Source: Octopus sinensis (lineage: Eukaryota). From it: 64,000 nucleotides of DNA. The notes below the pieces were generated by a model. That model had not been told where the DNA came from and did not search any database. It saw nothing but the letters and a program-made list of their open reading frames with translations. This document shows, one piece after another, positions 3,780-64,000 of the stretch (positions are counted from its first letter, which is position 1; the number at the start of each line of letters is the position of its first letter). The stretch covers positions 48,050,001 to 48,114,000 of the forward strand of contig NC_043004.1 of the NCBI RefSeq assembly GCF_006345805.1, in the 5' to 3' direction. Both the position numbers and the translations under genes were made by a program.

Positions 3780-5110
3780 CAAACCTGCCTGATTACCTCC
3801 TTGGTAATCCCGAAAAACATTGTGACCACTGGTCCAGCTGTTTCACCGTGAAGAGGGTACAGGCAGGCAGACGGACATAACGCCCAAATAATAATAATGA
3901 CACCGGGGACGTTTAACAGATGAGACCGGGGACGTTTTACAATGACACCGGGGTCGTTTAACATGTGAGAGCGATAAAACACTGCTCCGAAATCTATCCA
4001 AAAACATCGGAAATAAAGACATGGCATGGAGCCAAAAATAGCTGATAAAGGGTTGGACTATATCCAAGTAAGTAATACTCATTGAAATTTATTATTTTCC
4101 ACATGAAATGAAGTATTTTAACTGGATATCATGTCCACTGCTCGCACAGTGCATGTAAACATGCTTGATACAATACGATCCATCAACACCAGACCATCTC
4201 CGGCCCCAAACATCATGTACAAAAAAATTACAAATAAATTAATTAATACCGATATTATTCAACCCAAGAATAACAATCGGGAAATGCGTACTTTAAACTT
4301 GTTACACAAAAAGTACGAAAAACTCCACGTGCAAAACAATTTGACAACAGAAATTAACGGACCGATACCCAACGAAATTGATGACCGTCAAAATAATGGG
4401 CCGGACGTTGTACCTCATGTCCTGCAAATAAAACCAAAAAGACATAAATGGACACGTAAGGAATATATTTCAATTCTACACGCTTACTTTACAGCAGTGC
4501 TCTATCCAAAGAACGAAAACACAACAACATATGCATATAAAATATGGAAGAAAAACAACATAAATAAAGACTTGGATACAGCAATGAACCCTAATAAACT
4601 AGCTAACGTACGAAGATATATTCTCAACGCAAAAAAAATATCAAATAGAAATAGAACATTTAAAAGGAAAAATACATCACGAAAATATAGATAGAAGCCA
4701 CACAACAATGCCAAATAATATAAGCACTGAGATAATAAAACACGAAGACAAACGTAACATTTCCAACAAAAATGAAGTAAACAAAAAACAACAAACCCAG
4801 ACCATAGGGATGTATCATAATGTACAAAAATCACCAATCCAGAACACCACAGACAAACATAGAAATGAGAAGGAAGGCGAAACAAATCTAAAACCTGGAA
4901 ACAACGAATGGGAACCTAATGATTATGATACTATAAAAAATAAAATATTCAAAGAACTGAAAACTGCAGATCTCAGAATGGACCACCGACCATACCTCCC
5001 AAAAATCAAAATTGACAACAAAACAACATGAATAATAAATAGCATAAACCTGGCCGTCACGGACCTAATAACCACAGAAACAAATGGCAATATCACCGAG
5101 CTGAATGACA
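3780..5110 (+). mobile_element. R4/Dong-clade non-LTR retrotransposon 5' part, preceded by a probable 3' end and (AAT)n of another copy
   Basis: ORFs 4131-4694 and 4708-5031 contain KRHKWTRKEYISILHAYF..P....Y.IW, an R4-type N-terminal motif, and RPYLPKIK. Clearly homologous to 21580-22250 (-). Three about 25-bp GACACCGGGGACGTTTAACA-type repeats at about 3897-3963. Confidence 0.7.
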
Positions 5111-9434: not shown

Positions 9435-10545
9435 AGTCTCTTCTAGCGGTTCCACGCTCTTGGGAATTAGCCTCGATAAGCAGTCTGCATGACCAATTTT
9501 CTTCGATGGAATATACTGCATCTTGAAATTGTAGATCAGCAATATTTACCCCAACGTTGTAGTCGGTTCACTGTATAGCTCGGTAGTCCCTTCTGTGATC
9601 CAAAAATTGATAGTAATGGTCTACGGTCGGTTTGTAGCTAAAAACTTCTATGTAGAAATTTATGAAATTTTTTAAGGCAAAAATAATCGATATAGCCTCC
9701 TTCTCTATCTGACAATACATGTTTCCGCTGCTATTAACGCGTTAAGCATGAATTGCTGGCTTCATATTTTCATCTTTATACTTGTGTCGCAAGACTGCTC
9801 CTATTCCATAATCCGAAACATCAGACGTTACAACAATGTCCATTCTAGGATCGAAATGTGCAAGTGACAAGTCAGAAATCAGTATTTTTTTATGTCTTCA
9901 AATGCGTTTTGTCACTTTTCTAACCAATTTCATTTTTGTTTTTTAGAAAATTGTTTAATGGCGCTCTCAATTTATGTATATTTAGAATGTGCTGTTAATA
10001 GTAATTTGCTAGACCAAGGAAAGCTTGTAATGCCGGTATATTCCTTGAAGGTCGCATATTCTTGATTGCGTCTGCCTTCGACGGGCCAGGACGTCTTCTA
10101 TTCTTATCTATGAATTGACCCAGATATTTGATTTTAGGCAAAAAAAAAAAATTCACATTTCACTGAGTGTGAAACCATAATCTTTAATTTTTTTTTAAAG
10201 ACACACTTCACATGTTCGACATCCTCACTCCGCGATTCGCTTTTGATTAACACGTCATCTAGGTAAGGAATAGCAAATTAACAGTCTGCTAATATTGCGA
10301 CTATCACTGGTTAAATTATTGCATGTTCTACCTTAAGTCCAAAAGGTTGTCTATTTGTATAAACTTCTGTACGTGTTGACTTTGAGCATTAACCGCTTTG
10401 AGCATTTTTATATACTTTGCTTTGCAGATAAGCGTCAGACAAATTGAATTTTGAAAATATTTTTCCTCCGATCAGTTTTGTAAAAATATCTTCCGGAGTC
10501 GGTAGTGGATAATAACGATTCATTTTTAAACAGTCATTTAAACCG
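9435..10545 (-). mobile_element. Degenerate Gypsy pol fragment (RT and RNase H)
   Basis: YPLPTPEDIFTKLIGGKIFSKFNLSDAYLQ, PFGLKV, AIPYLDDVLI, IKYLGQFID..AIKNM..ALQAFLGLANYY, QIEKEAISIIFA, PLLSIFGSQKGLPSY..RLQRWG. Confidence 0.92.
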
Positions 10546-10639: not shown

Positions 10640-12030
10640 ATGTTTCCTCTCCCCCTCATCCTCACCCCCACCCTTCCACTACTCCAACCTTCCCACACAC
10701 CCCTTCCTCCTCTCTCTCTCCTCTCAGCCTTCCAACGCTTTCCCAACCCCCTCCCCTACCTAACACACCCTCCTCTACCCACTTCGGTCTGTGGTTACCA
10801 TTCCTCTACAGCTCCACTCTGAAGCGGAGTGCTCTCTTCTCAGTAAGGGTCTCCGCTTCAAGCCCCTTACTACATCCAGGCGAAAGTTAAACACCTCCCC
10901 GGCCGAACTCTCGGCTCTCGGCCCTTCGATGTCTCCGACACCGCAAAGAGACTGTCATCAAACCTGCCGACAAGAGTAGATTTGTAGTGGTGTGGCGCGC
11001 AGACCTTTACATGGCTGAAGCTCTTCGTCAACTTCAAGACACCTCCTTCTATTGCTCTCTGCCCTTCAACCCCACGCCTAACTACCAACAGATTGTGTCC
11101 TTCAACTATTCCTGACCTCATTTCCTCCTCCTGTCTCCCTCCAACTGCCTCCAACCTCATTGTCCGTATCCCAGACACTCCCACTATTTACTTCCTTCCC
11201 AAAATTCACAAGCCCAACAACCCTGGCCGCTCCATCATCTCCGCCTGCAACTGCCCCACGGAAATGATCTCCAAATGCCTCGATCGAGGCATTTGGAGAT
11301 CATTTCCGTGGGGCAGTTGCCTTCACACATCCACGACACCAATCATGCTTCCCGTCTGTTTAACTCTTTCTTCTTTCCCCCAGGCCCCTCTCAACTTCTG
11401 TTCACTCTTGACATTAAAAGTTTACATACGGTGATTCCACACAACGAGGGATTTCTTGCACCTAAACACTTCCTTCACCTTCGGCCTGATACCTCTACAC
11501 ATCTTCGTCTGGCCGAACTTGTCCTCTCCCTCAACTGCTTCTCGTTCGCGGGGTAGTTTTACCAAGAGTTCTCGCGAGTGGTCATGGAAATCAGAATGGG
11601 CTCCAACTATGCGAACTTATTCGTTGTCTAAGTTGAGGCCTAAATTTCCTCACAATTCACCTCGCCCGTCGAATTTCTCCACATTTCTGTCAGCATGCAC
11701 TACTCCGCTCTCACTGCCTCCATCCACTACAAACACACTGCCTCACACTCCTGCCTTAACTTCTCCTCCTACCACCCTACCCACACCAAGCTCTCCATTC
11801 CTTACTCCCAATTCCTACTCAAGCTCAGCAGCGACGATCATGATTTTAAGACTCAGTCACAACTCACGGCTCGCCAATTCATCCTACGTAGATATCCCCT
11901 CACCATTATCTACACTGCCCTTTCCCGGGCATGATCTGTAGACTGTGCATCTGTTCTTTCTCCTCTCACTCGCCCCACCCTTAACCGTCTCTCGTTTACC
12001 CTCATCTACCACTCCTCCACGCTCATTATC
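10640..12030 (+). mobile_element. Degenerate Penelope-like reverse transcriptase
   Basis: SEAECSLLSKGLRF, VIKPADK...VVVWR, IYFLPKIHKPNNPGRSIISACNCPTE, LFTLDIKSLHTVIPHNEG, LAELVLSLNCFSF, MGSNYANLFV, HPTHTKLSIPYSQF; many frameshifts. Confidence 0.9.
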
Positions 12031-12358: not shown

Positions 12359-12504
12359 ATGGCCAGTTACATTCACCGTCCAAGTAAAGTCTCCTTCATA
12401 TATCAAACAATACCGCAACGCGTGTACCAGCTTGCTGAAAATGACCCTGATAAACCAGCCCTTGTCGTTTATAAAAACAAAGAGAATCGGCAGGAGATAA
12501 CTCG
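12359..12504 (+). CDS. ANL-family acyl-CoA synthetase-like gene A, coding exon 1
   Basis: ATG 12359 gives MASYIHRPSKVSFIYQTIPQRVYQLAENDPDKPALVVYKNKENRQEIT(R); donor CG|GTAGGT at 12505. In-frame TGA upstream at 12326. Homologous to gene B exon 1 (25/49 identical, both 146 nt). Not listed in the ORF track. Confidence 0.88.
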
Positions 12505-12894
12505 GTAGGTTTTGGTTTTAATTTTATCTGAATGTCTATGTTTATCTCACAATACCTTCGTTGTATTACATTTCTAAATATTATGTAAGTTCCTCACCGT
12601 CGCTTTAGCCACCAATATTCGACTTGGGTCGAAGAGAATTTGTTGAGATGGATTTTCTAAAGTTGGATACCCTTTCTATCATGAACTCTCAGCTATTTCA
12701 AAGTAAGGTAACAATTCTCCGTGACCACACATGATTTAATGGAAGGACATCAAAATATTTGACAATGATACTTGCTTAAAAACTCTTACAAGATGCCAAA
12801 GAAAGGACACATACACGCACGCACACACACACACGAACACACACACGAACACACACACGAACACACACACATATATATATATTTATATATATAA

Positions 12895-13040
12895 AACAGG
12901 CTTCCTTTAGTTCCGTTTACCACATCTACTCACAAGGCTTGGTCGACCCGGGACAGATGTAGAAGACACTTGCCCAAGTTGCCATGCAATTGGACTGAAC
13001 ACGGAGTCATTTGGTTGCGAAGCAATCTTCTTATCACACA
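12895..13040 (-). mobile_element. CORE-like (OR2-type) SINE in intron of gene A
   Basis: Contains the cttgggcaagtgtcttctac core and tRNA-like head shared with copies at about 18743, 18940, 20290, 42630-42980, 47230-47540 and 50820. Confidence 0.75.
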
Positions 13041-13118
13041 GCCACGTCTGCGCCCATAACAAGTAATAAATACATTGCATAACATTTAATAGTAATAATA
13101 TATGAATTTGTTTATTGC

Positions 13119-14140
13119 TTGGTACCCAAAAGAAACCGGAATTTTACAATATTATTTTATTCACAAAGTTTTACATGTTTACACATTTATCGCCTTCAAC
13201 ATATTCTCCATTTGAAGCAGTGCATTGGTCCAGAGGCGTTTTCCATTGTTAGAAGCAGTCCTAAAGCTTTTGCGAAGAGATGCCTTTTAACGCCCCTGTC
13301 GTTTTTTCTCCACCTCTTCCACGTCTGCAAAACGTTTTCCTTTAAGGACATTTTCATTCTGGGTGGGTGGGGCAAAAAATGTTCCAGGGTGCAAGATCAG
13401 GTGAATAGGGAGGGTGGGTAAACGAGGTCAAGCCCTTTTTTGTCAAAAGCTGTCTCATCCTCGAGGTGGTTTTTGCAGGCACATTGTCGTGAAGAAACCC
13501 CCACACTCCACTTTGACACTGGTCAGGGTGTTTTCATCTCGCCGTGTCTCGCAAACTTTTCAGAAGTGCCAAGTAACATGTCTGGTTAACAGTTTGACCA
13601 GGAGGAATAAATATTGTGTGAACAATTCCTTTCGCCTCGATGAAACAAATCAGCATCGTCTTGACACTGGACCTCACTTGACTCACAGTTGGGGGGGGGG
13701 GGGGCGTGGTGACATTGAATGCTTCCATTGACTTGATTGCTACTTCGTTTCCAGTTCGTAGGCGTAGTTCCAGCTTTCGTCATCAGTGATGATCCTCGAA
13801 AAGGTTCGAATCAACTTCCAACTGATTTTTTTCAGTTCACTGCACGAACTCAGTCATGACATCTTTTGATCTTCCGTGAGCAAGTGAGGTACAAATTTTG
13901 CTGCAATTCTTTTCATTCGCAATTCCTCGCTCAAAATTCTTTGGCAGGGAATCCAGGACACATTAGTCATATCAACAAGTTTGTCAATTGTTTGACGACG
14001 GTCCTCAAAAATCAGTTCATGAATTTCGTGATGTTTTCATTTGTTCAGGAGATCGACGGTTGCCCTGGTCGATATTGGTCTTCAAGTGACCATTCCTAAA
14101 GTGTGAAGATTACTCGTAAATGTGTGTTTTGCTCATGGTA
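13119..14140 (-). mobile_element. Mariner transposon remnant in intron of gene A
   Basis: VRSSVKTMLICFIEAKGIVHTIFIPPGQTVNQTCYLALLKSLRD..WGFLHDNVPA..LKGKRFADVEEV; TIR-like end ggtacccaaaagaaaccggaatt at about 13121. Confidence 0.88.
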
Positions 14141-14579
14141 GCGGCCTTGTAAGCTGAGGATAGAAAGCTTCGAATGACCCGTCCTTGTTTTTTTTTTTTT
14201 TTTTTTTTGTATCGTTTATCTGGATGTTTTGTTGTCCCCTTTCGTATCACCTAGCTGTCCGGATTTTTTGCGTCCTTGTCCCATTTTGTATTATATATAT
14301 ATATATATATGATACATGGAGGTTTTTCTAAAAAGGAACGAAAATTGACATTTCGCATTTCTTGAATTGCGTGGCACTTACAGTTTGAGAATTTTAATTC
14401 TCATTATATTATTGAAATTTGAGGTAACATATTGAGTAAGCTTGAATGATTTAAGAAACCTAAATCTGGAGACGCAAAAAGAATTCCTAAATACATCGAA
14501 TCCCAGATATCTGCAAAACTGTTTTTAGTATTTCACTTTCGGTTTTTAAGTTTTAAACATAATTTTATTTGGAACACGT

Positions 14580-14790
14580 TAAGGTGGCGAACTGGCAGAA
14601 TCGTTAGCACGCCGCGCAAAAATGTTTAGCGGTATTTCGTCTGCCGCTACTTTCTGAGTTCAAATTTCGCCGAGGTCTATTTTGCCTTTCATCCATTCGG
14701 AGTCGATAAATTTAGTACTGGGGTCGATGTAATCAACTATCCCCCTTCCCCCGCCCAAATTTCAGGCGTTGTGCCAATAGTAGAAAGGAT
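14580..14790 (+). mobile_element. tRNA-derived SINE in intron of gene A
   Basis: ggtggcgaactggcagaatcgttagcacgccg head plus the same core as the other copies. Confidence 0.85.
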
Positions 14791-15335
14791 TATTTGGAAC
14801 ACCTTCTCCTCGATTTACGACCGAGTTCTGTTCTGACTTACAGGTCGTAAGTGGATCTGGTCGTATGTCGGGTTTATAGTTTTCAACATTATTTTGATTC
14901 AAAATGCAACTAATGCTTGAAAATGACTGAGTGAGAGACAGTGGCAGGCAGTGGATGCCTGGGTCAGAGGAAGACCTGCGTTTCCAGACACTAGCCATAG
15001 TTATCGTTACGCGCAGCTGCTCAGAGTCCGAAAATCGATTCTTTTTTACCTATTTACTTATGTTTTATAGTTTCTTATTTTTTGTGGTTGTGAGTCCGGA
15101 TGGTCGTAAATCGCATAGGTCGTAAGTCGAGGCTAAGGTGTATATATAAAAACCTGTTCATTTCTGGTAGACTTGAAAATTTGAAAAAGTATAACAAGCA
15201 TTATTTAAAAGAGTTTTCGATATTATAGTATTGTTTAAATGTCTATTTATGAGATACTTTACATACACTTTTATGCTGAAAGCATTATAAAGTATATCTA
15301 TTTAAGCATGTGTTTATTCTTTTCTTTTATTTCAG

Positions 15336-16821
15336 GAAACAAGTTTACGATGGCGCTGTAAAATTTGCCAAAGCTCTTATCAATTTAGGAATTCAGAAAG
15401 GAGAGTTAGTTGCCTACAGTGTATCCAACTGTGTTGAATGGTTGATATATGAGGTCGGCATAATTATGGCTGGGGCAATTTCTGTGAAATTAATGCTTGG
15501 ATTGGCAGATTTTAAAACGGTATTACATGGCTGCAGTTTAGTTGTATTTGATTCCAAATATATTTGGGAAAACTTCCTCAAAATCGCTGACATTTCTGAT
15601 AATGGGAAGGTTTCCTCTGAAATATATCCAAACTTGAGATTAGCCATTGCTGTCTCAGAAGCGGAGCGTCCTGAAAATGTTTTGTCTGCAGCTAAGTTGA
15701 TGGAAGATGTAAGTAGTAAAACTGATATAATATTTCCCTCCATGAGTCCTGATGATACTGCACTAATTTCTCAAACATCTGGTTCAACAGGTGTTCCTAA
15801 ACGAATTTGTCATTCACATTTTAACTGGATCAATGCATTTTACACATTTTACACAGATGCTGGTGTCAATGAAAAAGATAAGGCTTATTGTAGCCGTCCA
15901 ATGGGATATGTTGTTGGCTATCCGTCAATGTTTTTGTCAATTGGCTGCACACACGTCACGGGAGATGTGAAACTGCTAAATAATAACGAAAACATAGATT
16001 TCATTATAGATTTATGGAAGACAGAAAAATGTGACGTATTATGGGTAGTTCCACAGAGATTAAAATATATCAGAGAATCAGATTTCCGAGTAAAACGGAT
16101 TATATCAGGAGGAGATTTAATTGCAAGAGACTGGATTGAAAATTCTTTTCGTCTGGCAGACAAATTTTCCCTTGCATATGGAAGTACTGAAACGGTAATA
16201 TCATCACAGAGACTATTCTCCAAAGAAGATATGGAGCAACATGTAGAAGGAATGTTAGGTCGACTGCTTCCAGGTTCAGAGGCTAAAATCCTTGATGAAA
16301 ACAAAAATGTTGTTCCCATCGGAAGCATTGGGTCTCTGTACATTCGTAATGGTTGGATGCAAAAAATATTTCAGGATGGAAGGAATTGTTTAGAAAAGGG
16401 TTGGATGCCTACGTCAGATATTTGTAAATTGACTCCTGATGGTGATCTCGTAATGATAGGAAGAAGTGTAGATTTTATTAAAAAGTCTACAGTGAAGTTA
16501 TCCATAAAAACTATTGAAATATACGTTGGCCGTCACCCCAGCGTTGCAGAAGTGGTTGTGGTACCAATACCAGATGAAAGCTTTGGTGAATGTATATGCG
16601 CCTGTGTTACCATTCTACCGGGTCACAAATTCAGCAGAGATGATTTAACAAAATTCTGCACAGAAACAATGCCGCATCCAAGTAATTTTGACCATGTAAC
16701 AATAATTCCGGACTATTTCTTACATTTTACCAGCTTTCCAAAGCTTCCCAGTCAAAAATATAACAAACCTTCCATAAAGTGTTCTGCAATTGAAATGGTG
16801 AAGGAATCATACGGAAAGTAA
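15336..16821 (+). CDS. ANL-family acyl-CoA synthetase-like (AMP-binding) gene A, coding exon 2; spliced product 543 aa
   Basis: Acceptor ttttatttcAG|G at 15334-15336, phase 2 compatible with exon 1. P-loop QTSGSTGVPK (15772-15801), YGSTE, GWMPTSD, GRSVDFIK, PSQK with the A10 Lys. Uninterrupted ORF; ATTAAA at 16861. Confidence 0.93.
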
Positions 16822-22321: not shown

Positions 22322-25300
22322 GCACAGCTTCTAACGCCGGAGATGTACTGCGGTGTCAGCTGTTCACTGACTAAGGTAACACCTTATTTTTCGAGCACCT
22401 TCCGGAGTATTCGGGCGGTTCCAAGCAGTGCTGTTTTCTGCAAGTGATCCACCCTTATTGCAGCCCCTATTTGTTCAACGTACATCTCGAGATTTTTGCT
22501 TACTGTTCCCAGGGCTCCGACAATTATTGCTACTACTGCTACCTTTTTCATCGACCACAGCTGCTTAACTTCCCAAGCTAACCTGTCATATCTCTTGACT
22601 TTTCTTTCTTCCTTATCGCATACCTTGTTGTCAGCTGGGCATACTATATCTATGATTCAGCATAGTTTGTTTTCTTTCTCAATTAAGACTATGTCCGGCA
22701 ACCTATTCTCTATCTCATGGTCGCACAGAATCATGAAATCCCATAGGATCTTTGCATTTTCATTTTCGACGATGCCTTTGGTTCCATAGATTCTGCATCT
22801 ATCACTTTCTGATGCGTTGTCTATTCTGTATTTTATGTAATTTGTTCTTAGTGCTTGCTCTTGGGCAGCACAGATTAGAGCCTACGTTCCCAGTTTTAAA
22901 TCACTTTTGGTCATCCACAACCATCTTTTTTCTCTGTCTTATCTTCAACATTCCTACGAAATTGACCATGCATTCTTTTCTTTACTCACCTATTTTCAGT
23001 TTCATTCGATTTAAATTTCTTGTACAGTGCTTTATCTTTGCAGTCTTTCATCCTACACAAGCCTAGCGGTTCTGTGACATTTTTTCATACCATGCTATGT
23101 TGTTTTCTTCTGCTTTAATGCTGTATTCACATCCAATAAGTCCTCTTCCCCCCTCTTTTTCTTGGTACATACAGTCTGTCTGTGTCACTTTTTGAGTGGA
23201 GTGTCCCATATCTAATTAGTAACTTCCTTGCCTTTCTGTCTAAGTTGTTTAGTTCGGTACTGTCCATCCGATTACCCCTGCTCCATATCTAAGGGGTGAA
23301 ACTGCCCAGGTGTTGATAGTTTCAGGCTTATTCCGTCCGTTTAATTTCGACTTAAGGATTTATCTCAGTCTGCGCAAGTACTCCCTCTTAAATTTTTGTT
23401 ATTTCTTTCTCCATCAATTTATCCATTTCCAAAATCCCCAATTACTTATAGCCCGTCTCTTCTATCGTTAGCCCGTCCATACATTTGATTTTGCCTCTCT
23501 TCAAGACAAACACACCACACTTTCTGAGTGCGAACTCAATTCTGATATCAGCACTGAAGGTATACACGAGGGAACACGAGTATCAACGAGAGAACTGACT
23601 TGGGCTTCATCTTTACCATAAAGTTTGAGGTCATCCATGAATAACAAATGGTTTTGCTATGCTCAGAATCAGTGTTAGTGGTATCAAACACAGTACAAAG
23701 ATCAGTGGGGACAGGCAGTCCCCTTGGAAGATGCCCAACTGTCCCTAAACTTCTTCCATATGCTGTCAGGTCCGTCCTCCAATTCGCCATACCTTTTCCA
23801 AGCAATCGCTCAGCATTCGATGCAATCTCAAACAGGTTCATACACTCCATAATCCATGACATGGCTAAGTTACTTTTCTTCCTCTTGCAGTCTTTGAGTA
23901 CAGTTTTATCTATCAGGAATTGATCCTTGGTCCCTCTGCCCTTACGCTCGCAACCTTTCTGCTCATGTGGCAGGAATCCATTTTGTTCTAGATGTTCGTA
24001 CATTGACTCTGCAAGTATTCCAGTCAATAACTTCCACATAAGTGGCAAACAGGATATCGGCTTATAATTGTCTACCGTATAGTCTTTTCCGATGTTTTTC
24101 AGGCACAGCACTGTCCTACCCAATGACAACCACTCTGGAGTTGCTTGATGGGAACTTAACAAGATGTTGAGTTGCGCAGCTATTCGTGCATAACATTCAT
24201 CAAATCTTTTGATCCAATAGCCTTGAACTTCATCTGGTCCCGGGGCATCTAATTGCCTATTTTTGTTTGCTGATTTCCTTCACTTCCCTAACTGAAATGA
24301 CTAGTTCTGCCTGTTTTGGACAGACTACTGTTTGTTTCAGTTCCTTCAGCCTCCTTCTTGTGGTCCTTGTCTTTGCTCCAGATGTCAGTCCAAAAACCTT
24401 TGGCTTTCATTGTTATCTGATATCAACTTTTCATCTGTACACTCTCCATTTATTTCTTTATAGAATCTCTTCTGATCTACTCTGAATAACCTATTCTGCT
24501 GGTAATCTTTCATCCGTTGGTCGTATCTTACCGTATTTGCTTTCTTTGCAGCGATGCGCCGTTTCAGTTACTCTATTACTACTTTCAGGCCCTTTCTTTC
24601 AATATTATACTTCCTTTTCAGCGCCCTGTATTTTTGTTCGCTTTTAAGCTCCCTTTTCTCTTTTCGGTCTAACACAGAGATTTCCTTCGAGAGCATGTCT
24701 AACCCTGCCTGGATTCTTCTTTTCCACCATGGATCTTTTTCTTTTGTCACTCCCATTGTTTCTTTTTCTTGACATCGACACCCACATTTTCTGCCACAGC
24801 AATACTTGCTGCCTTGATCAAATTATTTGTTTCTGTGATGTTTCATTGACATTTTTCGTTTCTTGGTTCAATTTCCATCGGTCAACCTTTTTAAGGTTGC
24901 AAAAAATGTCGCTATCGTTCTCCTGTAGTCTTGCTTTTATTCTGTCGTAGATTGCCTTTTGTTCATCTGTCATATCGCCATTAGTCTTTTTTATCTTCTT
25001 TTAAAACATCTATATGTCTCTCAGCAATTAAACTACCACTGCTTCTTTCCTGTGCTATGAGATTACTCTTATTAGTAAGAACTGTATTTTCATCGTTATC
25101 TCTGCTGCTATTTTCCAAGACCCGTCTTTTGATAGCTTCGAGCTCTACTTCTGTGAACCAACGTTTTTTTTCTTATCGCTCTAGCTTGATCACATAGCCT
25201 GTGTTCTGTGAGTTGAAACAATCCCTTTTCTCTCCAATACGATGTCGGTAACCCCTAATTTGAGCACCATTTTCACCATTGCTCAGATAACACTCCATGA

Positions 25301-25590
25301 CCACAGCATTAATTTACTTGCTCCATCTACGCCGTGTGTGGTGGTCCCTTTCTGGATATCTACAGGCTGGAGCCGGACCAGAATCTCTGAGCCTGCCGGG
25401 TGCAACTCTGTCACCATCATTAGCTTCAGTTTCATTGCCCCCGTTATTCACAATATTTTGTTTTTCCATTGTCACTCATATGAGGTAGCGATTATCAGGT
25501 TGCGCAATTACCAGTATTTTTATTGTGACACCATCACTAGATGTATCATTAATCAGTCCATGGAGAGGTTCCACTCGTTTCCTTTCTTTA
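22322..25590 (-). mobile_element. Near full-length degenerate R4/Dong non-LTR retrotransposon between (AAT)n tracts
   Basis: N-terminal RRWSK..VVMECY..RGYR..HRLCDQARAIRK; RT region [42 protein letters not shown]; restriction-like endonuclease KILWDFMI.CDHEIENRLPDIV..IVGALG..QKTALLGTARILRKVL. Confidence 0.92.
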
Positions 25591-26236
25591 TGATTATTAT
25601 TATTATCATCACTGATATCACTGATATTATTACTTTCATGTGTAGTAGCAGCAGTGTTTGCAACAACAGCAACAGTAGCAGGGGCAGTGTAGTGGTTAGG
25701 GTAATAGATGGGCCTCAGATTCCTGTGCTATCATAATAGTAGTATTTATAGTATTAGCAGCTGCAGCATATTATTTTTATCATTATCACTATCACTACCA
25801 CTACTATTGTTATTATCATTATTACTATTTCCATTTTTTATTAAAAGATTTTACTAAATGTTCTTTATTTTCAACTTTTGTCATGTGATTGTTGAAGGAA
25901 ATAGTCGGGGAGTAGCTTGGTGAATATATCATATTCTACAGATCTATAAATAGATTCGGCAGATGGTGGGGAGGTCAGCCATAGAAACAAAATAATCTTC
26001 TCATCTTTTGGGTCAGCAGTGACCACTGACAGCGCTGCCTTGAAAAGAAGCAATTCAACCTGTTCTATTTGTAATTACTGGTAGAAAAAACAATAATATA
26101 TATACATATATGTATACATATATAATTTTAAAATAGGATAAAATCTTCATAAGAATTTATCAAGTAGTCAGCGTAAAAAACCTCATAAGGGAAAAAATCC
26201 AGCAATTTTTTCACTTAAATGTATTTATTTATATTA

Positions 26237-29918: not shown

Positions 29919-31434
29919 TTATTCCGGATTCAGTTCTGAAGAAAGTTTTTTTTTCTTAATATTTTTTTCTACTAAAGCAATTGCTGTTGATTTAATTGAC
30001 CTTCTGTCAAATTTCTGAGAGGTTAATAATGGAAAGCTTGTAAAATGTAAGAAATAATCTGGGTGCAGCGTTACAATATCAAAACCGCTTTGCTGTGGCA
30101 TAATTTCCAAGCAGAACTTTTTAAGCCCGTCTTCATTGAATTCGTGATTATCTCGGATGGTAATACACGCACACACCCGTTCACCAACTTCTTCATCCGG
30201 TATCGGAACCACAACTACGTCTTCTACACTAGGGTGATGACTGACATATTCCTCAACTTGTCTGACAGGTACCTTCACTGTTGACTTCTTGATAAAATCT
30301 GTATTTCTTCCAACTAGAAAAAAATCCCCCTCTGGTGTCATATAACCTATATCTGACATTGACTGCCAGCCATTTGTATTTGTCGAATCGCCACCCAGGT
30401 TTATTTTAGTTGTCCATTTATTTCGAACTTCAATATTGCCAACCTCTCCTATATTAACGGTTTTTCCGTTATCGTCAACAATCTTCATTTCTGTATCGGG
30501 GAAAGGCCTCCCTAGCATTTTCGGAAGATGTTCAGAAATATTTTTTTTTGTAAATACCCGTGAAGTTAAAAATGTAGCTTCACTACTTCCATACACAATT
30601 TGTATATGCTCAGTAAAGTTTAAGGAATGCATTAATGATTCTTTTGTAAGCATATCTCCACCGGTAAGAATAGCCTTTGCGCGATGCCCACAGTCTCTGA
30701 GTAGTTGTAGATGCTGTGGCAGAAGCCAAAGTATATTACAGCCTTCTTTTTTCCATATATTTTCAATAAACTCTAAGTTCTTAATGTCGTTTAGCATTTG
30801 AACATTTCCAGTTACATGGGTAGTTCCAACAGAAAACAACCCAAATGGATATCCACCGATGTATATCATTGGACGAGTGTTGTATGTTGTATCATCTGAG
30901 GTTACACTACTTGCATCCATGGCATGTACTATGCTATTCAACCAGTTATAATGTGTGTGATAGATATTTTTGGGTCGGCCTGTACTACCGGAAGTTTGGC
31001 AAATAAATGCGATGTCTTCTGGGTCCAAACTAGGTAAGTCGACTTGCTCACTGTCATTGATATTCAACATAAGGTTTGTGGCAGATAGAACGTTGGATGG
31101 GCAATATGTGTTGGATATATTGATGACAAACTTCAATTCCGGATATATTTCGCTAGTTACTTTACCGTCATCGGAAATTTGAGCAATTGCACAAAATTTA
31201 TCCAGTGAATCTTTTGAGTCAAATATCACCGCTTTGCATCCGGAAAAAATGTCTTTAAAATCTCCTGACTTTAGACTCAGCCTCAATGAAACTGCTCCGG
31301 CCATAATAATTCCGGTATCGTAGATTATGAGGTCTACACAGTTGGATATACATAAAGCGACGTGATCTCCTTTCTTAACGCCTAACTTAACAAGAGCTTT
31401 TGCAAACTTCACAGTACCGTCATACACCTCTTTT
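29919..31434 (-). CDS. ANL-family acyl-CoA synthetase-like gene B, coding exon 2; spliced product 553 aa
   Basis: Acceptor tttcAG|A at 31436-31434, phase 2. QTSGSTGRPK, YGSSE, GWQSMSD, GRNTDFIK, TSQK. Uninterrupted ORF; 238/494 identities to gene A exon 2 with no gaps (hand count). Confidence 0.93.
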
Positions 31435-31556: not shown

Positions 31557-31593
<37 letters not shown>

Positions 31594-31689: not shown

Positions 31690-31980
31690 ACAGACGGACA
31701 GACAAATAGATTGATTGACTGACAGATAGTAGGAGAGACAAACAGACAGACAGGCAGACAGACAGATGGACAGAGAGACAGATGGACAGACGAAGGGACA
31801 GACAGACTGATAAATCGACAGAGAGACAGGCGCACAGACAGACAGACTGATAGATAGATAGATAGACGAAGGGACAGACAGATAGATAGATAGACGAAGG
31901 GACAGACAGACAGATAGATCGACAGAGAGACAGGCGCATAGATAGATAGACAGACAGACAGACAGATAGATAGATAGATA
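31690..31980. repeat. Compound GACA/GATA microsatellite filling much of the 551-bp gene B intron
   Basis: Repeated gacagacagac/gatagataga with gacgaagggacagac subunits. Confidence 0.92.
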
Positions 31981-31985
31981 GTTAC

Positions 31986-32131
31986 CGCGTCAATTGCTGT
32001 CGATCGTCTTTTTCTTTATATACAACAAATGCTAATTTGTTTGGCTGCTCTTCCGCCAAGCATTTTAGTTTCTCAGGAATCGTTTGCCAAACAGCTGGTA
32101 TTCGACCTGGTTCATGGATATAACTTGTCAT
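31986..32131 (-). CDS. ANL-family gene B, coding exon 1
   Basis: ATG at 32131 gives MTSYIHEPGRIPAVWQTIPEKLKCLAEEQPNKLAFVVYKEKDDRQQLT(R); donor CG|GTAACT at 31985; 146 nt, as in gene A. Confidence 0.88.
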
Positions 32132-50067: not shown

Positions 50068-50662
50068 GGCGGCGAGCTGGCAGAATCGTTAGCACGCCGG
50101 GCGAAATAGCGGTATTTTGTCTGTCGTTACGTTCTGAGTTCAAATTCCGCCGAGGTCGACTTTGCCTTTCATCCTTCCGGCGTCGATAAATTAAGTACCA
50201 ATTACGCACTGGGGTCGAATTAATCGACTTAATCTCTTTGTCTGTCCTTGTTTGTTCCCTCTGTGTTTAGCCCCTTGTGGGTAGTAAAGAAATAGGTATT
50301 TCGTCTGTCGTTACGTTCTGAGTTCAAATTCCGCCGAGGTCGACTTTGCCTTTTATCCTTTCGGGGTCGATAAATTAAGTACCAATTACGCACTGGGGTC
50401 GATGTAATCGACTTAATCCCTTTGTCTGTCCTTGTTTGCCCCCTCTGTGTTTAGCCCCTTGTGGGCAGTAAAGAAATAGGTATTTCGTCTGCCGCTACGT
50501 TCTAAGTTCGAATTCCGCCGAAGTCGACTTTGCCTTTCATCCTTTCGCGGTCGATTAAATAAGTACCAGTTACGCACTGGGGTCGATGTAATCGACTTAA
50601 TCCCTTTGTCTGTCCTTGTTTGTCCCCTCTATGTTTAGTCCCTTGTGGGCAATAAGGAAATA
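50068..50662 (+). mobile_element. Tandem SINE array: one headed unit plus two 184-bp units
   Basis: Units start at 50295 and 50479 with the identical junction aaagaaata|ggtatttcgtc. Confidence 0.92.
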
Positions 50663-62870: not shown

Positions 62871-64000
62871 CTGAATTAATCGGAATGTATTTATCTAGTT
62901 CGTCTGGGTATTTTGTTGTTTGCTGAATAATTACTAAAACGCAGAGTATTGTTTATTTTCTTACTAAGTAAACTAAAGTTTTAACAAGTCTTTGTTTACT
63001 CTAGCGGTTTCGTATGACATCTACAATGATCTCATTTTATTTTGATGTTTTTATATTTATAATTATTAATTGTATAAAATAAAATAAGCACCAATCAAGT
63101 GGTGAGGTCGAGATAATCTTTATGCTCCTTCTAAAGTGTCTTTGAGTATATTTTTTTTTTAGTATTCCCGCTTAATTTTCGAGAGCAGTATCGGCAGAAA
63201 CGAAAGAATGCTGGGATAAAAATAAACACATTAGATGATGTGGTCCTGAATACATTATATGAACGAGTGTTGCATTGATGGCTCTGATTATGGGTCTATT
63301 CCGTCAATGCTAACTGGGACTAAACAACGACATAATCATAAACATCAACAACTGGAATATTGATTTCTTATAAAAGTACAAGATCAAAATTTTACAAGTT
63401 AAGGAATTAAGCTTCTGCTGCACCTACACCGTTTTGTATTGCATCAGAAATACAAAGGAAATGATTCTAATCAAAATTGGAAGCTGTTTAAAATGGCGTT
63501 TGCAATACTGTTCATGACACCCAATAAAATACTGCACACACATCTGAAACATCGCTCTGTGGGCTTCCCTCTCAAATATGCGCAAGCAACACTTGATTAT
63601 TCCGCAACCTATGTAAAGATTCCACTCAGGACAACTTTATCCAAGGTATTCCTCTTTTTTCTTCATCTTTTCAAAGATTCTAGGGTATTATTTGAAGGGA
63701 AATTCGGCTGCTATTTCAAGCAGAATTACCACTTAGATGATCCCACGTTTTCGACAACGTCGAGCGAAAAGTTCAAACTTATCATCAACTGTATCCACCT
63801 CACGAGTGTGAGAAGGCCTAGAGGTATCATGAGTGATTTCCCTTCACCGATTCTACTAAATAATAACGGAGAGAAAGACCATAGAGTTAATGCTCTTCAC
63901 ATGAAAATAAAACAATATAGACAAATTACAATCCATCGAAAGTTAGCTGAATAAGTCTTTCACCCTAATCACTTATCCAACTGACATCCTTTCGTACTTG

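What the first reader, a model, noticed from the sequence alone, without database searches (positions are those of the whole stretch)
16459..16497. A8 hinge/pantetheine-tunnel glycine replaced by threonine in both paralogs, and the variant motif is fully conserved
Seen: A has GRSVDFIKKSTVK and B has GRNTDFIKKSTVK; the block DFIKKSTVK is 9/9 identical against a 48% background. Established: the canonical A8 is GRxDDxxxxxG (Acs GRVDDVLNVSG, Gly524; 4-chlorobenzoate ligase GRVDDMIISGG, Gly409). The Gly lines the CoA pantetheine tunnel, and Acs G524L was reported to keep adenylation but lose thioester formation. By manual alignment these enzymes have Thr at that position and Val/Thr at the hinge Asp. 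Inference: they may adenylate a carboxylate and then use a non-CoA acceptor or a different second half-reaction. Firefly luciferase keeps this Gly, so this is not simply a luciferase signature.
Basis: partly seen in the sequence, partly recalled or inferred. Interest (0 to 1): 0.75.

Follow-up and report, generated by a model that had tools for sequence, protein, structure and literature searches.

The report
Octopus luciferase-like enzymes lacking tunnel glycine
Two neighbouring octopus genes encode ATP-using enzymes related to the candidate light-producing proteins of the firefly squid. All known squid and octopus members have lost a glycine that normally keeps open the channel for coenzyme A, so their second reaction step may not be the usual one.

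Summary
Window 16459-16497 (+) encodes GRSVDFIKKSTVK, the A8 motif of gene A (exons 12359-12504 and 15336-16821). Paralog B (32131-31986 and 31434-29919, minus strand) has GRNTDFIKKSTVK at 30311-30273. An ungapped HMMER alignment to 4-chlorobenzoate:CoA ligase places Ser433-Thr434 on Gly408-Gly409 and Val/Thr427 on the hinge Asp402. The hairpin contains no Gly, so no register shift can supply one.

The window is octopus nuclear DNA. A and B belong to a coleoid-specific ANL clade (100% bootstrap) that includes the firefly-squid crystal proteins wsluc2-4, which are candidate ATP-dependent luciferases (36-40% identity to A). Among 25 coleoid sequences, none has Gly at this position and 21 have Thr. 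The A8 block is the most conserved stretch in octopod members. The adenylation motifs are intact and dN/dS is 0.49.

Published data point both ways. Acs G524S/L is reported to block CoA addition, but G-to-Ala is tolerated in Acs and Macs. The position also varies in bivalve relatives, and one prokaryotic family has Ser there.

My best reading is that adenylation is retained and the second half-reaction is altered, probably CoA-independent (about 0.45). An ordinary acyl-CoA synthetase remains plausible (about 0.35). I rate it a new variant of a known kind, of moderate interest.

The parts
12359..12504 (+). Gene A exon 1 (ATG at 12359; 146 nt; codons 1-48 plus 2 nt of Arg49), followed by donor GTAGGT at 12505
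   Evidence: tblastn of O. bimaculoides P0001 residues 1-49. Sequence read. The spliced CDS translates without stops to 543 aa.
12505..15335 (+). Gene A intron (GT...AG, phase 2). It contains a SINE-like repeat copy at about 14699.
   Evidence: Acceptor ttttctttta tttcag|G at 15335/15336. The intron sits at the same position in gene B and in O. bimaculoides locus L001. Repeat copy found.
15336..16821 (+). Gene A exon 2 (residues 49-543 plus stop). It encodes almost the whole ANL enzyme.
   Evidence: ORF list and translation. PF00501 E=2e-40 and PF13193 E=1e-9. 91% identity to O. bimaculoides P0001.
15775..15801 (+). A3 / P-loop TSGSTGVPK (residues 196-204), the ATP-binding motif, intact
   Evidence: Translation. 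Motif table. Residue positions.
16459..16497 (+). A8 motif of gene A, GRSVDFIKKSTVK (residues 424-436). It holds Arg425, hinge position Val427, Asp428, and the hairpin FIKK / turn Ser433-Thr434 / VKLS.
   Evidence: Register against CBL G399-N411. Hairpin in the AF2 model.
16489..16491 (+). Codon ACA = Thr434, at the position of CBL Gly409 / Acs Gly524
16756..16758 (+). Codon for Lys523, the A10 catalytic lysine of the adenylation step (context LPSQK; the usual Gly before the Lys is Gln)
   Evidence: Translation. Alignment column with xGK of homologs.
31986..32131 (-). Gene B exon 1 (ATG at 32131, 146 nt), followed by donor GTAACT
   Evidence: tblastn of P0014 residues 1-49 at 100% identity. 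Sequence read.
29919..31434 (-). Gene B exon 2 (residues 49-553 plus stop). B is an ANL paralog, 48% identical to A.
   Evidence: 99% identity to O. vulgaris P0014.
30273..30311 (-). A8 motif of gene B, GRNTDFIKKSTVK (residues 424-436). The Thr434 codon ACA is at 30281-30279.

Best explanation
The 39 bases encode the A8 motif (hinge plus beta-hairpin) of gene A. A is one of two convergently oriented, two-exon paralogous octopus genes for cytosolic-looking enzymes of about 545 aa in the ANL (acyl-CoA synthetase / NRPS adenylation / luciferase) superfamily. Both genes belong to a clade restricted to coleoid cephalopods. The only studied members of that clade are the firefly-squid (Watasenia) photophore crystal proteins wsluc1-4, which are candidate ATP-dependent luciferases.

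Step 1, ATP-dependent adenylation of a still unknown substrate, is most likely retained, because every adenylation motif is intact and the genes evolve under purifying selection.

The turn of the A8 hairpin swings into the active site after the C-terminal domain rotates. In characterised ANL enzymes it carries the glycine that keeps the pantetheine tunnel open. Here it reads Ser-Thr, with no glycine anywhere in the hairpin. Thr is probably the ancestral coleoid state, and the hairpin is the most constrained segment of the octopod proteins.

My inference is that the canonical pantetheine tunnel is narrowed or closed. The second half-reaction would then not be standard CoA thioesterification but a CoA-independent step. 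It could be oxygenation of the adenylate, as proposed for the squid proteins, or transfer to another small nucleophile. The remodelled, lysine-rich hairpin (K431, K432, T434, K436) would form part of the second-step active site.

Shown: gene models, family and clade membership, the substitution and its register, its conservation, and intact adenylation motifs. Inferred: the effect on CoA use and the nature of the second step.
For: - **Gene models and paralogy:**
- **ANL membership:** domains. AF2 model with pLDDT 91 and pTM 0.84. Foldseek TM of about 0.8 to luciferase 4g36, MatB 4fut and DhbE 1md9.
- **Adenylation motifs:** A3, A5, the A7 Asp, the A8 Arg and the A10 Lys are all present.
- **Register of Thr434 on CBL Gly409:**
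- **Clade membership:** A is 36-37% identical over its full length to wsluc2/4 (E about 1e-125) and 40% to the first 400 aa of wsluc3. The coleoid clade has 100% bootstrap support. Gimenez et al. 2016 report O. bimaculoides proteins as the only hits above 30% identity for wsluc1-4.
- **No coleoid keeps the Gly:** 0 of 25 coleoid sequences have Gly at A8 position 11. The position 10-11 pairs are CT (11), ST (7), GT (3), then TD, SD, GE and SA (one each).
- **Constraint:** the A8 block ranks 1-2 of 535 windows for conservation in octopods. dN/dS against the O. bimaculoides ortholog is 0.49 overall and 0.22 in the C-terminal domain.
- **Published biochemistry:** Acs G524S/L is stated to block CoA addition (PMC8511477). 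The Watasenia light reaction needs ATP, Mg2+, O2 and coelenterazine disulfate, and the proposed scheme is adenylation followed by oxygenation by one ANL enzyme (PMC4899746).
Against: - No biochemical data exist for any octopod member. Luciferase activity of recombinant wsluc proteins was not found in the searchable literature.
- Octopus is, to my knowledge, not luminous, so a luciferase-type role cannot simply be transferred.
- A small side chain at this position is tolerated. MacsMa G459A retains about 20% of kcat with unchanged Km for CoA, and Acs G524A variants remain active. Thr could be accommodated by compensating changes.
- The position varies within the wider molluscan family: the clam Tegillarca has GT, other relatives have GD, and most bivalves have GG. 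One prokaryotic family carries Gly-Ser. This suggests the glycine is less critical on this scaffold.
- Beetle luciferase and NRPS A domains keep the Gly although they do not use free CoA in their main reaction. Presence or absence of the Gly therefore does not cleanly track CoA use. The luciferase point is from established knowledge. The NRPS case is seen.
- The AF2 model is in the adenylate-forming conformation, so the tunnel itself could not be examined.
Confidence: 0.45

Rival explanations
1. A and B are ordinary medium-chain or xenobiotic acyl-CoA synthetases, as their database names (ACSF2-like, YngI-like) suggest. The Ser-Thr turn would be a neutral or compensated variant that still lets the pantetheine arm reach the adenylate.
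For: The closest experimentally characterised homolog of the squid clade is human ACSF2, a CoA ligase, at 24-26% identity. G-to-Ala at this position keeps CoA ligase activity in MacsMa and Acs. A basic residue at A8 position 13 (Lys436) is kept; the equivalent MacsMa Lys461 contributes to catalysis. The position varies among molluscan relatives and is Ser in a prokaryotic family annotated as acyl-CoA synthetases. The A9 and C-terminal domain motifs are normal.
Against: Acs G524S, with a side chain smaller than Thr, is reported to block CoA addition. A and B have no Gly at either position 10 or 11. In contrast, 88 of 89 prokaryotic homologs in the sample keep at least one. Very strong conservation of the variant hairpin argues for a specific function rather than drift. 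The clade includes proteins that make up the ATP-dependent light-producing crystals of a squid.
Confidence: 0.35
2. The proteins have largely left catalysis of a two-step reaction. They would act as adenylation-only enzymes, ligand-binding proteins or structural, assembly-forming proteins, as the squid relatives form intracellular crystals.
For: wsluc1-3 are the building blocks of photophore microcrystals. Some clade members have degraded core motifs: A5 is YSSNE in wsluc2 and YSSVE in wsluc3, and AAAET in O. bimaculoides P0167. The N-terminal domain of A evolves fairly fast (omega 0.65).
Against: A and B keep canonical A3, A5 (YGSTE / YGSSE), the A7 Asp, the A8 Arg and the A10 Lys. The most conserved segments are the catalytic loops, namely the P-loop and the A8 hairpin. 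That pattern is what one expects of an active enzyme that still uses the second conformation.
Confidence: 0.12
3. The apparent loss of Gly is an alignment or gene-model artefact, such as a register shift, a frameshift or a pseudogene.
For: None found.
Against: Alignments to four solved ANL enzymes are ungapped. No Gly exists between G424 and G448. Both reading frames are open with the same intron position. The motif is shared by orthologs in four octopod species. The AF2 model is confident.
Confidence: 0.02

Closest known systems
Watasenia scintillans (firefly squid) crystal proteins wsluc1-3 and mantle homolog wsluc4 (Gimenez et al. 2016, Sci Rep 6:27638, PMC4899746)
   Same: They fall in the same coleoid-specific ANL clade (100% bootstrap). 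Identity is 36-40% over the full length. They share the N-terminal S-Y-x-H...TIPxR start, the DFI(I/K)K hairpin stem and the absence of Gly at A8 position 11. The A3 motif and the A10 Lys are retained.
   Different: Octopods have Thr at position 11 (ST, CT or GT), while wsluc2/4 have Asp (TD/SD) and wsluc3 has Glu (GE). wsluc2 and wsluc3 have a degraded A5 motif (YSSNE, YSSVE), whereas A and B keep YGSTE/YGSSE. A and B have SQK instead of xGK at A10. The octopod and decapod expansions are independent, with A, B and the C lineage duplicated within octopods. To my knowledge Octopus is not luminous and no crystals are known. The luciferase role of the wsluc proteins is itself unproven.
Medium-chain acyl-CoA synthetases (human ACSF2; ACSM2A; Methanosarcina MacsMa; bacterial FadD5/FadD13/YngI)
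   Same: They share the two-domain ANL fold, the adenylation motifs and the A8 Arg, with about 23-26% identity. These are the names that annotation pipelines give to the octopus proteins.
   Different: The tunnel glycine(s) of A8 (SGG or SG) are replaced by Ser-Thr. There is no N-terminal extension, because the ANL core starts within about 15 residues of Met1, so a mitochondrial presequence like that of ACSF2 seems absent (inference). CoA use has not been tested.
4-chlorobenzoate:CoA ligase (CBL) and Salmonella acetyl-CoA synthetase (Acs), the structural reference enzymes for domain alternation
   Same: The alignment from A7 to A9 is ungapped, and the A7 motif T-S-D is identical to that of CBL. 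A hairpin follows the hinge in the same way.
   Different: CBL D402-D403...G408-G409 corresponds to V427-D428...S433-T434. In Acs, G524S/L is stated to block CoA addition.
Beetle (firefly) luciferase
   Same: It is an ANL enzyme whose second half-reaction is CoA-independent oxygenation of the adenylate. The fold match has TM of about 0.8 to 4g36 and 2d1q. Counting positions in the motif places a Lys at A8 position 8 (K431), where luciferase has Lys443. This comes from my recollection of the luciferase motif and no alignment was printed.
   Different: Identity is only about 15%. Luciferase keeps the A8 Gly (Gly446, from established knowledge). The origin is independent, since the squid and octopus proteins group with molluscan ACS-like proteins and not with insect luciferases.

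Membership tests
ANL superfamily (adenylate-forming enzymes) | An AMP-binding N-terminal domain (PF00501) plus an AMP-binding C-terminal domain (PF13193) | tested here: met
   A scores 2e-40 and 1e-9. B scores 1e-43 and 6e-7. All are above the gathering cut-offs.
ANL superfamily (adenylate-forming enzymes) | Core adenylation motifs: A3 P-loop, A5 YGxTE, A7 Asp, A8 Arg and A10 catalytic Lys | tested here: met
   A has TSGSTGVPK, YGSTE, GWMPTSD, GR and SQK. B has TSGSTGRPK, YGSSE, GWQSMSD, GR and SQK.
ANL superfamily (adenylate-forming enzymes) | Two-domain ANL fold | tested here: met
   The AF2 model has pLDDT 91.1 and pTM 0.84. Foldseek gives E about 1e-37 and TM up to 0.80 to ANL structures in the adenylate-forming conformation.
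Acyl-CoA synthetase (functional class, including ACSF2-like / YngI-like as annotated) | Glycine at A8 position 11 (Acs Gly524, CBL Gly409, MacsMa Gly459) lining or opening the pantetheine tunnel | tested here: not met
   Thr434 aligns with CBL Gly409 and Ser433 with Gly408 in an ungapped alignment. There is no Gly in the hairpin.
Acyl-CoA synthetase (functional class, including ACSF2-like / YngI-like as annotated) | Formation of an acyl-CoA thioester from the acyl-adenylate | not testable with these tools
   This needs an enzyme assay. No published assay of any member of the coleoid clade was found.
Acyl-CoA synthetase (functional class, including ACSF2-like / YngI-like as annotated) | Orthology to ACSF2 (reciprocal best match, mitochondrial presequence) | not tested
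   Only indirect evidence is available. wsluc proteins are 24-26% identical to human ACSF2. A and B lack an N-terminal extension. No ACSF2 sequence was compared here.
Coleoid wsluc-like ANL clade | Closer to wsluc proteins than to any non-cephalopod ANL, and monophyletic with them | tested here: met
   Identity to wsluc2-4 is 36-40%, against 30% or less to bivalve or chiton homologs and about 25% to bacterial ones. The clade has 100% NJ bootstrap support in two trees.
Coleoid wsluc-like ANL clade | Shared A8 hairpin of type GRxxDFI(I/K)K-x-(non-Gly) | tested here: met
   None of 25 coleoid sequences has Gly at position 11, and 21 of 25 have Thr.
Luciferase (functional class: squid coelenterazine-disulfate type or beetle type) | ATP- and O2-dependent light emission with a luciferin | not testable with these tools
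   This needs an assay. The luciferase role is still only proposed even for wsluc1-4.

The most novel reading that the evidence does not exclude
The Thr-containing, glycine-free A8 hairpin could be the sequence signature of an ancient (over 270 My), coleoid-wide switch of an ACS-like enzyme to a CoA-independent second half-reaction. That reaction might be ATP-dependent oxygenation of an imidazopyrazinone or another enol/carboxylate substrate. Non-luminous octopuses would then still carry the ancestral activity from which the firefly-squid luciferase was recruited. If so, the soluble octopus paralogs A and B would be tractable stand-ins for working out the unresolved mechanism of the insoluble, crystalline Watasenia luciferase.
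Probability: 0.15. Interest if true: 0.8.

Novelty: new variant of a known kind. Interest (0 to 1): 0.5.

Why it matters
ANL enzymes are a textbook case of one active site doing two reactions by domain rotation, and the A8 glycine is described as strictly conserved because it opens the pantetheine tunnel. Here a whole animal clade has replaced it and then conserved the replacement more strongly than almost anything else in the protein. That clade contains the only candidates for the firefly-squid luciferase, whose use of ATP has been unexplained since 1985.

If the substitution marks loss of CoA use, three things follow. It gives a simple sequence criterion for when the clade left acyl-CoA synthesis. 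It warns that the database names (ACSF2-like, YngI-like, acyl-CoA synthetase) are probably wrong. It also points to octopus proteins as experimentally convenient relatives for studying squid bioluminescence.

If the enzymes turn out to be normal CoA ligases, the result is still useful. It would show that Thr is tolerated where Ser and Leu are reported to block Acs.

Tried and rejected
- **Bacterial reading rejected:** ORFs are sparse, and the GT-AG intron with a polypyrimidine tract shows eukaryotic DNA.
- **Further paralogs or pseudogene fragments in the window:** tblastn finds only the four exons of A and B.
- **Other ORFs of 150 aa or more:** none has a Pfam match.
- **Primary paper on Acs G524 mutants:** I tried an id recalled from memory (PMC2536627) and it is not held. 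A term search for G524 or Gly524 was mostly noise, but it yielded PMC8511477, which cites the result.
- **The A8 of wsluc1:** the supplementary protein sequences are cut at 400 residues. A peptide search for xDFI motifs found nothing. wsluc1 did not appear in the protein searches, so it remains unseen.
- **Recombinant wsluc activity or octopus expression data:** nothing was found.
- **Exhaustive profile search of 1.84 billion representatives:** the list was swamped by multi-module NRPS megasynthases, whose many A domains sum to high scores. It added only two relevant proteins, O. bimaculoides P0167 and Tegillarca P0212.
- **P0002 as expression evidence, rejected:** its N-terminus (MFFLYFRK) is the translated end of the intron, so it comes from genomic DNA and not from a spliced transcript (one search compared).
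- **The hinge residue (Val/Thr for Asp) as a signal, rejected:** that position is K, D, S, T or G among ordinary homologs.
- **Examining the tunnel in the model:** AF2 returned the adenylate-forming conformer and no coordinates are available for measuring a tunnel.
Full report
**1. What is at the coordinates**

Window 16459-16497 (+) reads GGA AGA AGT GTA GAT TTT ATT AAA AAG TCT ACA GTG AAG, which is GRSVDFIKKSTVK. It lies in a 503-codon ORF at 15310-16821. That ORF is really the large second exon of a spliced gene. The ORF's first residues are a translated polypyrimidine tract ending in the acceptor tttcag|G at 15335/15336.

The window as a whole has very few long ORFs and about 37% GC, which fits animal nuclear DNA. 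tblastn with the O. bimaculoides ortholog finds a 49-codon first exon at 12359-12504, followed by GTAGGT.

A second copy lies tail-to-tail on the minus strand. Its exon 1 is 32131-31986 and its exon 2 is 31434-29919, with the intron at the same position and phase. The spliced products are 543 aa (A) and 553 aa (B). B carries GRNTDFIKKSTVK at 30311-30273.

**2. Check of the observation**

A and B are 48% identical over 493 residues without a single gap, and DFIKKSTVK is identical in both. Three of the nine codons differ synonymously, so the identity is maintained at the protein level.

Both proteins hit PF00501 and PF13193. The A8 motif lies between those two Pfam models, so I checked its register against solved structures.

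The C-terminal 101 residues of A align without gaps to 4-chlorobenzoate:CoA ligase residues 376-467:
- ...MIGRSVDFIKKSTVKLS... (A)
- ...ILGRVDDMIISGGENIH... (CBL)

This places G424/R425 on G399/R400, V427 on the hinge D402, D428 on D403, S433 on G408 and T434 on G409. The same register is obtained against M. tuberculosis FadD5 (DRKKDMIISGGEN) and a DhbE-type enzyme (GRIKDQINRGGEK). A 13-sequence family profile gives it again against LgrA (GRLDNLVKIRGYR).

A has no glycine between G424 and G448, so no local register shift could put one in the turn.

An AlphaFold2 model built on a 77-sequence alignment has pLDDT 91.1 and pTM 0.84. It shows the expected hairpin: strand 429-432, two-residue turn S433-T434, strand 435-438.

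**3. What the genes are**

The best database match to A is O. bimaculoides "putative acyl-CoA synthetase YngI" at 91% identity. B is 99% identical to an O. vulgaris "acyl-CoA synthetase". A set of 17 octopod proteins from O. bimaculoides, O. sinensis, O. vulgaris and Argonauta follows at 47-85%. There is then a sharp drop to about 30% for bivalve and chiton proteins and about 25% for prokaryotic ANL enzymes.

The literature search gave the key context. Gimenez et al. 2016 (PMC4899746) identified the proteins of the light-emitting microcrystals in firefly-squid arm photophores. wsluc1-3, and a mantle homolog wsluc4, are ANL enzymes whose only hits above 30% identity were O. bimaculoides proteins.

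Using wsluc2 and wsluc4 read from their Supplementary Figure S1, and the first 400 residues of wsluc3 from Table S4, I found that A is 36-37% identical to wsluc2/4 over the full length (E about 1e-125). It is 40% identical to the wsluc3 N-terminal 400 residues.

A profile search then retrieved the database copies of wsluc2, wsluc3 and wsluc4 plus two other decapod sequences.

In neighbour-joining trees with 100 bootstraps:
- the coleoid sequences form a clade with 100% support;
- the octopod sequences form a clade with 82-89% support;
- the decapod sequences, including wsluc2-4, form a clade with 100% support in the first tree;
- within octopods, the B lineage (B plus Argonauta P0017), the A lineage (A, P0001 and Argonauta P0003) and a third, further-duplicated lineage all predate the Octopus-Argonauta split.

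A fourth, divergent O. bimaculoides paralog (P0167) joins the coleoid clade near its base.

A and B are thus octopod co-orthologs of the squid luciferase candidates. They are not close relatives of ACSF2, which is 24-26% identical to the wsluc proteins according to the paper.

**4. The A8 variant in its evolutionary context**

A8 positions 10-11 read as follows:

| Group | Positions 10-11 |
|---|---|
| Octopods | ST, CT or GT |
| The two non-Watasenia decapods | GT |
| wsluc2 | TD |
| wsluc4 | SD |
| wsluc3 | GE |
| O. bimaculoides P0167 | SA |
| Chiton Liolophura | ST |
| Most bivalves | GG |
| Clam Tegillarca | GT |
| An unnamed molluscan group | GD |

Counted over 25 coleoid sequences, position 11 is never Gly and is Thr in 21. 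Thr is therefore most simply the ancestral coleoid state, held since before the octopod-decapod split. PMC7708342 quotes about 270 My for that split.

Among 19 octopod sequences, the window containing the A8 motif is the most conserved nine-residue stretch of the whole protein. GRSVDFIKK has mean column conservation 0.953 and DFIKKSTVK has 0.947, against 0.936 for the P-loop and 0.73 on average.

Among 89 non-molluscan homologs from the first search, 63 have Gly and 26 have Ser at position 11. Of those 26, 25 belong to one GRKKFIIRVGSYTV family. All but one of the 89 keep at least one Gly at positions 10-11. A and B keep none.

The glycine is therefore not literally invariant in the superfamily. 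A hairpin turn with no glycine at all is nevertheless rare in this sample.

**5. Are the genes functional enzymes?**

All adenylation motifs are canonical or near-canonical in A and B. These are the A3 P-loop, the A4 His, A5 YGSTE/YGSSE, the A7 Asp, the A8 Arg and the A10 Lys.

I extracted the O. bimaculoides ortholog from locus L001. Against it, A shows dS 0.097, dN 0.047 and omega 0.49. Omega is 0.65 in the N-terminal domain and 0.22 in the C-terminal domain that carries A8-A10. Constraint is thus moderate overall and stronger on the rotating domain.

The Foldseek matches with the highest TM-scores (about 0.8) are ANL enzymes in the adenylate-forming conformation: P. pyralis luciferase 4g36, MatB 4fut and DhbE 1md9. 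Thioester-state entries such as 4CL 5bsr superpose at TM of about 0.63. The model therefore says nothing about the tunnel.

**6. What the substitution is likely to do**

Published mutagenesis points in both directions.

[quoted passage not shown] The same study selected active G524A variants.

PMC10455477 describes the equivalent Gly459 of Methanosarcina Macs as proposed to open the pantetheine tunnel. It shows that G459A keeps acyl-CoA synthetase activity, with kcat falling from 2.15 to 0.41 s-1 and Km for CoA not raised.

Thr is beta-branched and larger than Ser, which blocks Acs. On an Acs-like scaffold one would therefore predict loss of the CoA step. Scaffolds differ, however, and compensation is possible.

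The clade context tips the balance modestly. The only biochemistry tied to this clade is a reaction that needs ATP, Mg2+, O2 and coelenterazine disulfate. The proposed scheme is adenylation followed by oxygenation by a single ANL enzyme.

The extreme conservation of the hairpin, together with retention of basic residues at positions 8, 9 and 13 (K431, K432, K436), suggests that the second, rotated conformation is still used. The hairpin would still form part of that active site.

I therefore favour retained adenylation with a non-canonical, probably CoA-independent second step (about 0.45) over an ordinary CoA ligase (about 0.35). A largely non-catalytic role gets about 0.12 and an artefact about 0.02.

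The hinge substitution (Val/Thr for Asp) carries no weight. That position is Lys, Asp, Ser, Thr or Gly in ordinary homologs.

**7. Comparison with what is known, and novelty**

The genes are annotated in public octopus genomes, under names that are probably misleading. Their kinship to the squid proteins has been in print since 2016.

What I did not find described is the clade-wide loss of the A8 glycine. The 2016 paper's main text never mentions a hinge or a glycine (one search shows zero occurrences). It discusses only ATP-binding motifs, the A10 Lys and the luciferase Lys.

[quoted passage not shown] I do not file them as acyl-CoA synthetases, because one defining feature was tested and not met and the activity is untestable here.

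The finding is a new variant of a known kind, of moderate interest. It becomes considerably more interesting if the octopus enzymes prove to be CoA-independent.

**8. Limits**

- No expression data, substrate or assay exists for any octopod member.
- The trees are distance-based.
- The A8 of wsluc1 was not seen.
- The dN/dS estimate rests on a single close pair with low dS.
- The tunnel could not be examined structurally.
- The statements that Octopus is non-luminous and that beetle luciferase keeps Gly446 and Lys443 come from my general knowledge and not from a tool result.

Noticed in passing
window 50111-50662, plus copies at 1121, 2406, 14699, 17609, 18029, 18203, 40337, 45116, 45388, 45562: A dispersed repeat of about 180 bp (core GGGGTCGATAAATTAAGTAC) occurs 13 times on both strands, against 0 expected. 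Three copies are in tandem (period 184, 93% matches) and one lies inside the intron of gene A. It looks like an octopus SINE-type element.
   Followed up: partly
window 31690-31978 and about 31560-31590 (gene B intron): The first 300 bp of gene B's intron, directly after the donor site, are a (TCTG/TCTA)n tetranucleotide microsatellite of about 72 units. A (GA)n run lies further in.
   Followed up: no
gene A residues 521-523 (window 16750-16758); gene B residues 521-523; chiton P0019: The A10 motif reads S-Q-K (S-E-K in O. bimaculoides) instead of the usual x-G-K in the A and B lineages and in the chiton homolog, which also has the S-T turn in A8. All other cephalopod paralogs keep G-K. The two glycine losses may be coupled.
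   Followed up: partly
O. bimaculoides protein P0167 (XP_014780446/7, on another chromosome): This is a fourth, divergent octopod paralog near the base of the coleoid clade. It has Ala at A8 position 11 (GRDVDYITKSARK) and a degraded A5 motif (AAAET instead of YGSTE). It may be a catalytically compromised member.
   Followed up: partly
proteins P0030, P0033, P0034, P0044 and others (metagenomic; one set named Candidatus Hodarchaeota): A prokaryotic ANL family has A8 = GRKKFIIRVGSYTVLPSEVE, with Ser at the 'invariant' Gly position. It accounts for 25 of the 89 non-molluscan homologs retrieved. Its function is unknown, and it shows that the Gly is not strictly conserved.
   Followed up: no
Acanthosepion (Sepia) pharaonis protein P0121 (810 aa): This public gene model appears to fuse partial copies of two or three tandem wsluc-like genes and ends in junk sequence before A8. 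That suggests a tandem cluster in cuttlefish and a mis-annotation.
   Followed up: no
Thr434 codons: window 16489-16491 (+) and 30281-30279 (-): Both paralogs use ACA for Thr434. A-to-I RNA editing of the first base, which is common in coleoids, would recode it to Ala, the one substitution known to be tolerated at this position in Acs and Macs. This is pure speculation and no editing data were examined.
   Followed up: no
window 4131-4694, 11456-11941, 23548-24162, 25242-25736, 63439-63954: The five other ORFs of 150 aa or more in the window have no Pfam match. They are probably chance ORFs or repeat-derived.
   Followed up: partly
gene A versus O. bimaculoides locus L001 (exons 10001-10146 and 12883-14368): dN/dS is uneven: 0.65 in the N-terminal (substrate-binding) domain and 0.22 in the C-terminal domain. 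The fast change in the substrate-binding domain could reflect shifting substrate specificity. It rests on a single species pair with low dS.
   Followed up: partly
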